DNA from: Octopus bimaculoides
Lineage: Eukaryota
Reading direction: 5' to 3'
Assembly: GCF_001194135.2 (NCBI RefSeq)
Contig: NC_069007.1
Location: forward strand, 5,747,379 to 5,811,378
Length of the DNA: 64,000 nt
Shown here: positions 40,525 through 41,075 of the stretch, in pieces
Numbering within the stretch: position 1 is the stretch's first letter
How the letters are laid out: the number at the start of each line of letters is the position of its first letter
The notes under the pieces: generated by a model
Database searches by the model: none
What the model saw: only the letters and a program-made list of their open reading frames with translations
What the model was told of the DNA's origin: nothing
Translations under genes and position numbers: made by a program

Positions 40525-41075
40525 TATTGTTGTATTTGGGGATGGTCATGTTGCCAGTTTAGCCAGTAAAAACACATGCACTGTATATTTGGTGTGGAAT
40601 TTCAACCATGTTTCGTGGTCTGCTACCACAACAGCTCCTTTATAGGATCCAGTTAGCTCAAGACATCATCAGGAGGAACCACGTCCGGTTTCGGCCCCTA
40701 CTCCTCTACCGTTTTGACGTGGCGGGGCCCCTCCTTTCGGAAGTGTCTTCAGCTCTGGTGTTGGGTGCATGTCTTCTTTCACTGTTTGTGACTGTTATAA
40801 TTCAACTGTGGAATGTCCCTCGCTATGGTTATTTTCCAGGAGGTTCTGGCCACACATTACATTACATTAATCCTATTTCGGCCAGAGTTCTTTCGTCACA
40901 CTTCTGTGACCTCATCAGTGGTCCTTTGCTTTCTTCTTTCTTATATGTGTGTCTTCTTTCTTATATTGGTGTCATTTATTGGCTAAACTGGCAACATGAT
41001 CATCCCCAAATACAACAATATCTGTTTCAACGCACAATTTCACATAAAAAATCTTGCAAAACAAATATATAAACG
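40525..41075 (-). mobile_element. Fold-back, hammerhead-bearing non-autonomous element (Penelope-like/retrozyme-like)
   Basis: Inverted arms 40526-40564 and 40981-41019 match at 38/39. A direct repeat GATGTCATAACT at 40513-40524 and 41076-41087 is read as a TSD. A hammerhead motif lies inside. Confidence 0.7.
40880..40924 (-). ncRNA. Minimal type-I hammerhead ribozyme motif
   Basis: GGACCA-CUGAUGA-G-GUCACA(GAAG)UGUGAC-GAAA-GAAC-UC-UGGCC: complete core, 6-bp stem II, stem I GG(A)CCA/UGGCC, CUC cleavage triplet. Predicted cut between 40885 and 40884. Confidence 0.7.

What the first reader, a model, noticed from the sequence alone, without database searches (positions are those of the whole stretch)
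40525..41075. Hammerhead ribozyme carried by a TSD-flanked fold-back element: candidate undescribed non-autonomous Penelope-like/retrozyme-like family
Seen: a complete minimal type-I hammerhead on the minus strand (40880-40924; CUGAUGA, 6-bp stem II with GAAG loop, GAAA, CUC triplet, 5-bp stem I with one bulge). It sits inside an element with 38/39-identical inverted arms and a 12-bp direct repeat (GATGTCATAACT) on both sides. Known: Penelope-like elements carry minimal type-I hammerheads with a very short stem III capped by a palindromic tetraloop that work as dimers, and they often leave inverted terminal structures and TSDs. Inference: this is a short non-coding retroelement processed by self-cleavage. 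The GAAC loop is one change from palindromic GAUC, and the extra G after A9 must either bulge or may lower activity.
Basis: partly seen in the sequence, partly recalled or inferred. Interest (0 to 1): 0.85.

Follow-up and report, generated by a model that had tools for sequence, protein, structure and literature searches.

The report
Penelope-type hammerhead in octopus retroelement insertion
A short non-coding retroelement copy in an octopus-like genome carries the minimal hammerhead ribozyme and the inverted-arm, one-sided-tail and target-duplication layout typical of Penelope-like elements, so it is a real but ordinary example of a known kind.

Summary
A complete type-I hammerhead core lies on the minus strand at 40924..40880. 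The arms are 46 nt and 44/46 complementary. GATGTCATAACT occurs exactly twice in the window, at the two ends of 40525-41075. My minimal-hammerhead descriptor hits only this site in the window and nothing in 300 shuffles. No Rfam hammerhead model reports it.

The motif has the published hallmarks of Penelope-like-element (PLE) minimal hammerheads: a 6-bp helix II closed by G10.1-C11.1, a short helix I, and an unpaired base after A9. So the "extra G" is a signature, not a defect. Only loop 3 (GAAC) is not palindromic.

The element also has PLE insertion architecture. A roughly 450-nt non-coding ribozyme-sense unit is joined head-to-head to a 101-nt inverted copy of its own 3' end. Only that copy carries a 55-nt tail, and 12-bp duplications flank the whole.

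Two older relatives lie within 4 kb: a fold-back copy with a decayed ribozyme, and a solo 3' end. The solo copy argues against a MITE.

No RT/GIY-YIG coding sequence is in the window, and I could not reach genome-wide copies. Verdict: a new member of a known kind, probably an inactive relic. Interest is low to moderate.

The parts
40513..40524 (.). Left target-site duplication, GATGTCATAACT. It abuts the left arm.
   Evidence: Exact 12-mer found only twice in the window, 0.01 expected.
40525..40974 (-). Ribozyme-sense unit, copy c1, about 450 nt and non-coding. In the RNA sense it reads: hammerhead, then a 280-nt GC-richer structured body, then the 3' module without the tail.
   Evidence: Stops in all three minus-strand frames. 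The RNA fold of this strand has z -3.2 (0/100 shuffles as good), against z -0.9 for the complement.
40880..40924 (-). Minimal type-I hammerhead of the PLE kind. Helix I is 5 bp plus a bulged A. There is an unpaired G after A9. Helix II is 6 bp (G10.1-C11.1) with a GAAG loop. Helix III is A15.1-U16.1 plus G15.2/C16.2 around AA. The predicted cut follows C 40885.
   Evidence: Direct reading. Only descriptor hit in the window, with 0 hits in 300 shuffles. Hallmarks listed in PMC4209133.
40525..40570 (-). Left inverted arm. This is the 3' end of the ribozyme-sense unit and ends at ...CCCCAAAUACAACAAUA with no tail.
   Evidence: Inverted repeat I1, 46 nt, 96%. Alignment A1.
40932..40973 (.). Head-to-head junction between the two opposed copies. 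It contains a 20-nt unit repeated 2.1 times.
   Evidence: Tandem Repeats Finder row and D3. Arm identity drops abruptly inside 40975.
40975..41020 (+). Right inverted arm. This is a short, 5'-truncated copy of the same 3' module in the opposite orientation.
   Evidence: and alignment A1.
41021..41075 (+). 55-nt 'tail'. It continues the 3' module, is present at this end only, and ends ...AUAUAAACG.
   Evidence: All three plus-strand copies carry it (c1, c2, c3). It is absent from c1's minus-strand copy, and c2's has at most a short remnant. Family homology stops at 41075, exactly where the duplication begins.
41076..41087 (.). Right target-site duplication, GATGTCATAACT.
41891..42241 (-). Copy c2, an older fold-back insertion of a related subfamily, about 80% identical. 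It has the same layout: a ribozyme-sense unit on the minus strand, and an inverted 3' module with tail on the right.
   Evidence: blastn and nhmmer within the window. Alignments A1 and A2.
42016..42061 (-). Decayed hammerhead homolog in c2: CUGAAGA G GUCACA GAAGG UGUGCC AAAA AAUC UU UGGAC. G12 has become A, the 10.2/11.2 pair is broken, and C17 has become U.
   Evidence: Direct reading and alignment A2.
38150..38289 (+). Copy c3, a solo 3' module with tail and no inverted partner. Its 5' side abuts an (AAT)28 microsatellite.

Best explanation
This is one insertion made by the integration machinery of a Penelope-like retroelement (PLE). The cargo is a short non-coding RNA. In its own sense (the window's minus strand) that RNA consists of a PLE-type minimal type-I hammerhead, a structured body of about 280 nt, and an AC-rich 3' module.

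Shown by the sequence: the hammerhead core and helices; the absence of any ORF in that sense; two opposed copies of the same 3' module; a 55-nt extension on only one of them; a perfect 12-bp duplication flanking the whole; and two older relatives within 4 kb, one of which keeps a decayed homolog of the ribozyme.

Inferred from published PLE biology: the element's endonuclease cut both target strands 12 bp apart. Both 3'-OH ends then primed reverse transcription on element RNA from internal start sites. One used the distal site, giving the copy with the tail. The other used the proximal site, giving the copy without it. The two cDNAs were joined head-to-head at about 40925-40974.

In master copies the ribozyme would pair with a second copy through its very short helix III and cut after C17 to trim the transcript. 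This copy has a lone ribozyme and a non-palindromic GAAC loop. One change would give GAUC, and copy c2 has AAUC at the same place. This copy is therefore most likely an inactive relic.

Within this explanation I slightly favour a dedicated short non-autonomous family that keeps only the ribozyme and the 3' recognition module. The alternative is a randomly 5'-truncated piece of an autonomous PLE.
For: Motif: the complete core is the only descriptor hit in the window, with none in 300 shuffles.

[quoted passage not shown] My descriptor also recovers the Poseidon_Ac hammerhead at its tandem junction, which has the same extra nucleotide.

Architecture: PLE insertions are described as 5'-truncated. 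They often have an inverted 5'-truncated copy adjacent at the 5' end, and an optional 30-40 bp tail at one end only (PMC8557442). The purified PLE protein cleaves and extends both target strands and starts reverse transcription at two internal sites that delimit the tail (PMC11167929).

The same pattern is seen here. The arms are 44/46 complementary. The tail is present in all three plus-strand copies, absent from c1's minus-strand copy and at most a short remnant in c2's. Homology ends at 41075, where the 12-bp duplication begins.

The solo copy c3 shows the arm is a 3' end and not a terminal inverted repeat.

The three insertions fall within 4.1 kb of a 64-kb window and nowhere else. PLEs are reported to insert into or next to earlier copies (PMC6765202) and near microsatellites; c3 abuts (AAT)28.

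The ribozyme-sense strand has stops in all frames and folds with z -3.2, against -0.9 for the complement.

The host is an octopod: the window shares SINE families at 85-93% identity with Octopus sinensis. Octopus genomes are annotated with many Penelope families (PMC13282606).

A second min-HHR candidate of the PLE type lies at 2483..2451 and has a homolog in O. sinensis.

For a dedicated short family: in both c1 and c2, homology starts at the 5' edge of the ribozyme. The two copies share the ribozyme and 3' module but differ in the body.
Against: No Rfam hammerhead model reports the motif, even at E<=10. I could not run a validated PLE hammerhead through the same tool as a control.

Loop 3 (GAAC) is not palindromic, which is the one listed hallmark that fails.

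Only two copies carry the ribozyme region, and the second is as diverged there (about 80%) as in the arms. So there is no evidence of selective conservation and no true compensatory change.

The window holds no RT or GIY-YIG remnant (tblastn with Poseidon_Ac), and no autonomous partner sharing the 3' module could be looked for.

The tail is 55 nt, against the 30-40 bp described.

No other genomic copies could be retrieved.

Cleavage activity is untested, and published PLE min-HHRs cleave poorly in vitro.
Confidence: 0.72

Rival explanations
1. It is a dispersed monomer of a metazoan non-LTR retrozyme. That would be a short tandem-repeat element whose type-I hammerheads release circular RNAs, with this copy being dead single-unit offspring.
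For: The unit size of about 400 nt is within the published 51-972 bp range, and monomers are reported as common and dispersed. The ribozyme-sense RNA is strongly and strand-specifically structured, as retrozyme circles are. Published animal retrozymes have duplications longer than 4 bp. The 2026 preprint derives retrozymes from PLE pLTRs, so this reading overlaps the main one.
Against: There is no tandem unit and no second ribozyme in the same element. The hammerhead is the minimal PLE kind, not the canonical kind with a 4-bp helix II and loop 1/loop 2 contacts that defines the described animal retrozymes. The inverted 3' fragment and one-sided tail are PLE insertion marks and are not described for retrozymes.
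Confidence: 0.12
2. It is a SINE-like element mobilised by a LINE, with a 5' inversion produced by twin priming. The hammerhead-like motif would be a chance match or a relic with no link to the transposition machinery.
For: A 12-bp duplication fits target-primed reverse transcription by LINEs (my own knowledge). The window is full of SINEs and holds LINE-like ORFs.
Against: As I understand twin priming, the inverted segment comes from a different, more 5' part of the RNA. Here both arms are copies of the same 3' end. There is no poly(A) or simple-repeat 3' tail. No tRNA-like part was found, and Rfam reports no tRNA, 5S or other small-RNA family. The motif carries PLE-specific extras that a chance match need not have.
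Confidence: 0.08
3. It is a MITE or foldback-type DNA transposon with terminal inverted repeats, in which a hammerhead-like string arose by chance.
For: It has 46-nt near-perfect inverted arms. A TA dinucleotide lies at both outer arm edges, as Tc1/mariner elements would leave, and a mariner remnant lies at 61858-62373.
Against: The 12-bp duplication flanks asymmetric ends, with a 55-nt extension on one side only. The arm sequence also occurs alone, with the extension (c3). To my knowledge no DNA-transposon superfamily makes 12-bp duplications. A homolog of the motif is inherited in c2. Chance expectation for the motif is about 1e-3 per window or less.
Confidence: 0.05

Closest known systems
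Minimal type-I hammerheads of Penelope-like elements (Cervera and De la Pena 2014, PMC4209133)
   Same: Type-I topology and a full catalytic core. An unpaired nucleotide lies between A9 and G10.1. It has a G10.1-C11.1 pair, a long helix II (6 bp), a short helix I (5 bp), and a helix III too short to be stable in a monomer. It lies in a non-coding terminal part of a retroelement insertion, and other copies are dispersed and degraded.
   Different: Loop 3 is GAAC rather than a palindrome. Helix I has a bulged A. No flanking RT/GIY-YIG ORF or second ribozyme in tandem is present at this locus.
Poseidon_Ac (PAc) of Anolis carolinensis, the PLE studied in vitro (Frangieh et al. 2024, PMC11167929)
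   Same: The hammerhead has the same build (CUGAGGA-U-helix II-GAAACGUC). Its 3' region is AC-rich and has two reverse-transcription start sites, whose interval is the optional tail. Both target strands are extended, which explains opposed copies.
   Different: In PAc the ORF starts inside the ribozyme; here all frames are closed. The PAc tail is 30-40 bp, against 55 nt here. The cut site lies 360 nt from the tail-less 3' end here, against about 90 nt in PAc. There is no sequence similarity.
Animal non-LTR retrozymes (Cervera and De la Pena 2020, PMC7229834; Li et al. 2026 preprint)
   Same: Short, non-coding and structured RNAs with a type-I hammerhead. They depend on another element for mobility and are now argued to derive from PLE pLTRs. 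Monomeric dispersed copies exist.
   Different: The described retrozymes are tandem arrays with canonical hammerheads and loop-loop contacts. This is a single minimal hammerhead in a fold-back insertion.
Schistosome Sm-alpha/Sj-alpha SINE-like hammerhead elements
   Same: A short dispersed non-coding retroposon carrying a type-I hammerhead, in a genome that also has PLEs.
   Different: Those elements carry a promoter ahead of the ribozyme (PMC6765202). No tRNA-like part was found here.
LINE-1 twin-priming inversions
   Same: A retroelement insertion with one part inverted, flanked by a duplication of 10-20 bp.
   Different: In twin priming the inverted and direct parts are different segments of the template. 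Here both are the same 3' end, and there is no poly(A).

Membership tests
Hammerhead ribozyme, type I | Invariant core C3 U4 G5 A6 N7 G8 A9 / G12 A13 A14 / A15.1-U16.1 / H17, in the order helix I 5' strand, core, helix II hairpin, GAA, helix III, H17, helix I 3' strand | tested here: met
   Direct reading of 40924..40880 on the minus strand. It is the only descriptor hit in the window.
Hammerhead ribozyme, type I | Match to a curated covariance model (Rfam Hammerhead_1 and relatives) | tested here: not met
   No hit at gathering score, and no hammerhead family at E<=10 on 801-nt and 86-nt slices. I could not run a validated PLE min-HHR as a control. The 2014 paper says these variants needed their own relaxed descriptor.
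Hammerhead ribozyme, type I | Mg2+-dependent self-cleavage after H17 | not testable with these tools
   This needs in vitro transcription of monomer and dimer constructs.
PLE minimal hammerhead (min-HHR) | Unpaired nucleotide between A9 and 10.1 | tested here: met
   G at 40911. Equally, G10.1 could pair with C11.1 and the second G could bulge. Either reading keeps the core (PMC4209133).
PLE minimal hammerhead (min-HHR) | G10.1-C11.1 pair, long helix II (6-8 bp) and short helix I (4-5 bp) | tested here: met
   Helix II is GUCACA/UGUGAC, 6 bp. Helix I is GG(A)CCA/UGGCC, 5 bp with one bulge.
PLE minimal hammerhead (min-HHR) | Palindromic 15.2-16.2 and loop 3, allowing an intermolecular helix III in a dimer | tested here: not met
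   The sequence AGAACU pairs with itself only at A-U and G-C on each side of two A.A mismatches. G15.2/C16.2 can pair, but the AA loop is not palindromic. Copy c2 has AAUC at this place, so an ancestral GAUC is possible but not shown.
PLE minimal hammerhead (min-HHR) | Conservation and compensatory changes among family copies | tested here: inconclusive
   Only one other copy exists in the window. In helix I, two one-sided changes keep pairing (A-U to G.U, C-G to U.G). The c2 core is mutated (G12A), and overall identity in the motif is about 80%, the same as in the arms.
Penelope-like element insertion | ORF with RT and GIY-YIG endonuclease | tested here: not met
   tblastn of the Poseidon_Ac protein against the window gave nothing below E 1.9. 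The ribozyme-sense unit has stops in all frames. This copy is therefore non-autonomous or truncated.
Penelope-like element insertion | Inverted 5'-truncated copy adjacent to the 5' end, giving inverted repeats made of the element's 3' end | tested here: met
   Arms 40525-40570 and 40975-41020. The same module occurs alone at 38150-38289. Described in PMC8557442.
Penelope-like element insertion | Optional tail of a few tens of bp at one end only | tested here: met
   41021-41075 is present on all three plus-strand copies, absent from c1's minus-strand copy and at most a short remnant in c2's. Its length is 55 nt, against the published 30-40 bp.
Penelope-like element insertion | Target-site duplication flanking the whole composite | tested here: met
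   12/12 at 40513-40524 and 41076-41087. That PLE duplications vary in length is from my own knowledge and was not checked here.
Penelope-like element insertion | Autonomous partner in the same genome sharing the terminal sequence | not testable with these tools
   No octopus genome could be searched by DNA. One 26-kb O. sinensis locus held no copy.
Animal non-LTR retrozyme | Head-to-tail tandem copies, each with a canonical type-I hammerhead having loop 1/loop 2 contacts | tested here: not met
   No tandem unit of element size is present. There is one hammerhead, of the minimal kind, and helix I is open with no loop 1.
MITE / DNA transposon | Symmetric terminal inverted repeats directly flanked by a duplication of fixed short length | tested here: not met
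   The right duplication is 55 nt beyond the right arm. The arm module occurs alone. The duplication is 12 bp.

The most novel reading that the evidence does not exclude
The two fold-back copies may represent a dedicated family of short (about 350-550 bp), structured, non-coding elements in octopods. Such a family would keep only a minimal hammerhead at a fixed 5' end and the PLE 3' recognition module, and would parasitise octopus Penelope elements. That would be a cephalopod counterpart of retrozymes or Sm-alpha that spreads as fold-back monomers rather than tandem arrays. I found no paper describing hammerheads in octopus.
Probability: 0.3. Interest if true: 0.4.

Novelty: new member of a known kind. 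Interest (0 to 1): 0.25.

Why it matters
If it holds up, it adds cephalopods to the animals in which Penelope-type minimal hammerheads sit in dispersed non-coding insertions. It also gives a clean single-locus example of the PLE insertion signature: two opposed copies of the 3' end, a tail on one side only, and an intact 12-bp duplication. That signature agrees with the two-strand, internal-initiation mechanism reconstituted in vitro in 2024. It could help repeat annotation in octopus genomes, where such fold-backs are easily mislabelled as MITEs or as unknown repeats. It does not change what is known about hammerheads or PLEs.

Tried and rejected
1. Rfam scans of the whole window and of two slices found no hammerhead family.

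2. I used the 154-aa plus-strand ORF across the element (40608-41069) as bait for other copies. It has no homolog and no Pfam match, so I treat the ORF as chance.

3. Exact-pattern scans for the 3' module in metagenome and viral contigs found nothing.

4. I used the window's LINE-like ORF to fetch DNA from the same genome. Hits were only 35-49% identical, and the locus fetched (L001) is unrelated.

5. The mariner ORF led to one Octopus sinensis locus (L002). It showed that the window is octopod, but it holds no copy of this family.

6. tblastn with the Poseidon_Ac protein found no PLE coding remnant in the window.

7. I rejected the idea that c3 and c2 are the pLTRs of one old full-length PLE. 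The c2 ribozyme is on the wrong strand, and there is no RT signal between them.

8. A second CUGAUGA and a GAAAC in the body (about 40660-40700, minus strand) do not assemble into a hammerhead in any permutation I tried by eye.

9. A search for a paralogous empty site, using the joined flanks, found none.

10. A search of the paper library for the sequence strings found nothing.

11. Co-folding of two ribozyme copies with GAAC or GAUC did not give a clear dimeric hammerhead fold, so I draw nothing from it.

12. The 3' module alone has no notable RNA structure (z -0.3).

Full report
**What is there**

On the minus strand, 40924..40880 reads GGACCA-CUGAUGA-G-GUCACA-GAAG-UGUGAC-GAAA-GAAC-UC-UGGCC. 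Every invariant hammerhead position is present. The topology is type I, and the predicted cut follows the C at 40885.

GATGTCATAACT occurs exactly twice in the window, at 40513-40524 and 41076-41087, against 0.01 expected.

The left repeat touches the left arm, while the right repeat lies 55 nt beyond the right arm.

**Is it more than chance?**

I wrote a descriptor for a minimal type-I hammerhead. It requires:
- CUGANGA, with an optional extra base after it
- a helix II of at least 4 bp closed by G-C
- GAAA, then 0-8 nt, then UH
- a helix I of at least 4 bp with at most one bulge

It hits only this site in the window and nothing in 300 dinucleotide shuffles. Allowing one core mismatch adds nothing. 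My rough estimate is about 1e-3 chance hits per window for the weakest acceptable motif, and far fewer for one of this quality. Across a whole 2-3 Gb genome a chance hit is still conceivable, so the context matters.

Rfam offers no support. There were no hits at gathering score, and no hammerhead family at E<=10 even on an 86-nt slice. I could not run a validated control through that tool. The 2014 paper states that these minimal variants needed their own relaxed descriptor.

**Which kind of hammerhead?**

Cervera and De la Pena (PMC4209133) describe the minimal hammerheads of Penelope-like elements (PLEs) as having:
- a long helix II (6-8 bp)
- a short helix I (4-5 bp)
- a conserved G10.1-C11.1 pair
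- a palindromic 15.2-16.2 and loop 3

These ribozymes are thought to act as dimers and cleave poorly in vitro. The motif here meets every point except the last.

The Poseidon_Ac element, whose sequence is in the supplement of PMC11167929, has the same build at its tandem junction: CUGAGGA-U-GCCUGC...GUGGGC-GAAACGUC. My descriptor recovers it once helix I is relaxed to 3 bp.

Loop 3 here is GAAC. The homologous place in the second copy reads AAUC. An ancestral GAUC is therefore possible, but two sequences cannot show it.

**What carries it**

Searches within the window find the arm sequence five times, in three insertions, all between 38.1 and 42.3 kb.

| Copy | Coordinates | Layout |
|---|---|---|
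| c1 | 40525-41075 | The finding itself: a fold-back with an intact ribozyme |
| c2 | 41891-42241 | Fold-back of the same layout, about 80% identical |
| c3 | 38150-38289 | A single plus-strand copy abutting (AAT)28 |

Alignment A1 shows that the three plus-strand copies all continue for about 55 nt beyond the arm, to ...AUAAAY. The two minus-strand copies stop at or just after ...CAACAAUA. In c1, family homology ends at 41075, exactly where the 12-bp repeat begins. So the repeat is a true target-site duplication, and the extension belongs to the element.

The arms are therefore two opposed copies of the element's 3' end, one with and one without a terminal extension. They are not the terminal inverted repeats of a DNA transposon, and c3 shows that the module also inserts on its own.

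The ribozyme lies at the 5' edge of the longer, minus-strand copy, next to the head-to-head junction (40925-40974). That junction holds a 20-nt duplication.

In c2 a homolog of the ribozyme sits in the same place but is decayed: G12 has become A, one helix II pair is broken, and C17 has become U. Its identity to c1 in the motif is about 80%, the same as in the arms. c2 is therefore drifting neutrally.

**How it most likely arose**

This layout is the published signature of PLE insertions:
- heavy 5' truncation
- an inverted 5'-truncated copy adjacent at the 5' end
- an optional 30-40 bp tail at one end only
- a bias for microsatellites (PMC8557442)
- a tendency to land in or beside earlier copies (PMC6765202)

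Frangieh et al. (PMC11167929) showed that a purified PLE protein cleaves and extends both target strands. They also showed that it starts reverse transcription at two adjacent internal sites in an AC-rich region, and that the interval between those sites is the tail.

Applied here, and as inference: a staggered cut 12 bp apart in GATGTCATAACT was followed by priming from both strands on element RNA. One priming used the distal start, giving the 101-nt plus-strand fragment with the tail. The other used the proximal start in CCCCAAAUACAACAAUA, giving the roughly 450-nt minus-strand unit. The two cDNAs were then joined head-to-head.

The near-identity of the arms and the intact duplication suggest that c1 is fairly young.

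LINE twin priming is a poorer fit. It inverts a different part of the template, and there is no poly(A) here. A MITE is a poor fit because of the asymmetry, the solo copy and the 12-bp duplication.

**Coding capacity and RNA**

The ribozyme-sense unit has stops in all three frames. The 154-aa ORF on the opposite strand has no homolog and no Pfam match. tblastn with the Poseidon_Ac protein finds no RT or GIY-YIG remnant anywhere in the window.

The 406-nt ribozyme-sense RNA folds much better than its shuffles (z -3.2, 0 of 100 as good). Its complement does not (z -0.9). In that fold, helix II forms, but the 3' strand of helix I is taken up by a competing hairpin.

Two things slightly favour a dedicated short non-autonomous family over a random fragment of an autonomous PLE. 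First, homology between c1 and c2 starts at the ribozyme's 5' edge. Second, the two copies share the ribozyme and 3' module but differ in the body. With two copies this is only a lean.

**Host and background**

One fetched locus of Octopus sinensis (L002, from chromosome CM016866.1) shares the window's SINE families at 85-93% identity. The window therefore comes from an octopod. Octopus genomes are annotated with many Penelope families, and an expansion is dated to about JC distance 0.2 (PMC13282606). That is about the divergence between c1 and c2/c3.

I found no paper describing hammerheads in octopus.

A second candidate min-HHR of the classic no-loop kind lies at 2483..2451 on the minus strand, in a unit flanked by (TA)n: CUGAAGA-A-GAGC-UUU-GCUC-GAAACGUA. 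It has a homolog in L002, where the ribozyme region is the best-kept part, helix II is kept, and loop II differs. Ribozyme-bearing short repeats are thus not a one-off in these genomes.

**Comparison with what is known, and novelty**

As a motif, it works like, and passes most tests for, the PLE min-HHR class. It fails loop palindromy, and it fails the Rfam models, which may simply not cover that class.

As an insertion, it passes the architectural tests for a PLE product but lacks the coding part.

It is not a described animal retrozyme, which is a tandem array with canonical hammerheads (PMC7229834).

I rate it a new member of a known kind, and this particular copy as probably inactive.

**Limits**

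I could not search any octopus genome by DNA. Family-wide conservation, covariation, the distribution of ends and the autonomous partner all remain untested, and cleavage is untested.

**Verdict**

Confidence that this is a PLE-made insertion carrying a PLE-type hammerhead is 0.72, and interest is 0.25.

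Noticed in passing
window 2451-2483 (minus strand), within the unit 2345-2575; L002:349-415: A second candidate PLE-type minimal hammerhead: CUUU-CUGAAGA-A-GAGC-UUU-GCUC-GAAA-CG-UA-AAA. It has the extra base after A9, and a palindromic ACGU helix III without a loop, like Poseidon_Ac. 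Helix I is only 3 bp. It lies in a unit of about 230 nt flanked by (TA)n, next to an assembly gap. A homolog in Octopus sinensis (79% over 71 nt) keeps helix II with a different loop but has A6 changed to U. The ribozyme stretch is the best-conserved part of the two copies.
   Followed up: partly
window 38150-42241: All five occurrences of the 3' module (three insertions) lie within 4.1 kb, with none elsewhere in the 64 kb. This fits the reported habit of PLEs to insert in or beside earlier copies, but a local rearrangement is not excluded.
   Followed up: partly
window 40525-40930: The ribozyme-sense RNA of the unit is strongly structured (z -3.2, 0/100 shuffles as good), while the complementary strand is not (z -0.9). 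In the full-length fold, a hairpin (UGGCC... pairing with ...GGCCA about 30 nt downstream) competes with helix I.
   Followed up: partly
window 40932-40973: A 20-nt unit (TCTTCTTTCTTATATGKGTG) is repeated 2.1 times exactly at the head-to-head junction of the two opposed copies. It may be a trace of how the two cDNAs were joined.
   Followed up: no
window 40660-40700 (minus strand): A second CUGAUGA lies close to GGCCGAAACCGGAC, which includes a CCGG palindrome after GAAA, inside the body of the unit. I could not assemble these into a hammerhead in any permutation.
   Followed up: partly
window 41133-41560, 3097-3349, 48121-48468, 19400-19632 and others: A high-copy SINE-like repeat starts 46 nt to the right of the element and recurs many times in the window. 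Other window repeats match an Octopus sinensis chromosome at 85-93% identity, which identifies the host as an octopod.
   Followed up: partly
window 61582-62828: A mariner-type transposon remnant. The ORF 61858-62373 matches HTH_48, HTH_Tnp_IS630 and Transposase_1, and the DNA is 80% identical over 1.3 kb to a copy in Octopus sinensis.
   Followed up: partly
window 59441-60457: Two adjacent ORFs look like the N-terminal part of a non-LTR retrotransposon protein. Their homologs (35-49% identity) are unnamed proteins from ENA assemblies.
   Followed up: partly
window about 2600-3070, 6400-6800, 7260-7950, 13450-14300, 18180-18560, 36000-36800 and others: There are many runs of N (assembly gaps), nearly all bordered by (TA)n or similar microsatellites. 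The assembly is fragmented at simple repeats, and elements next to them may be incomplete.
   Followed up: no
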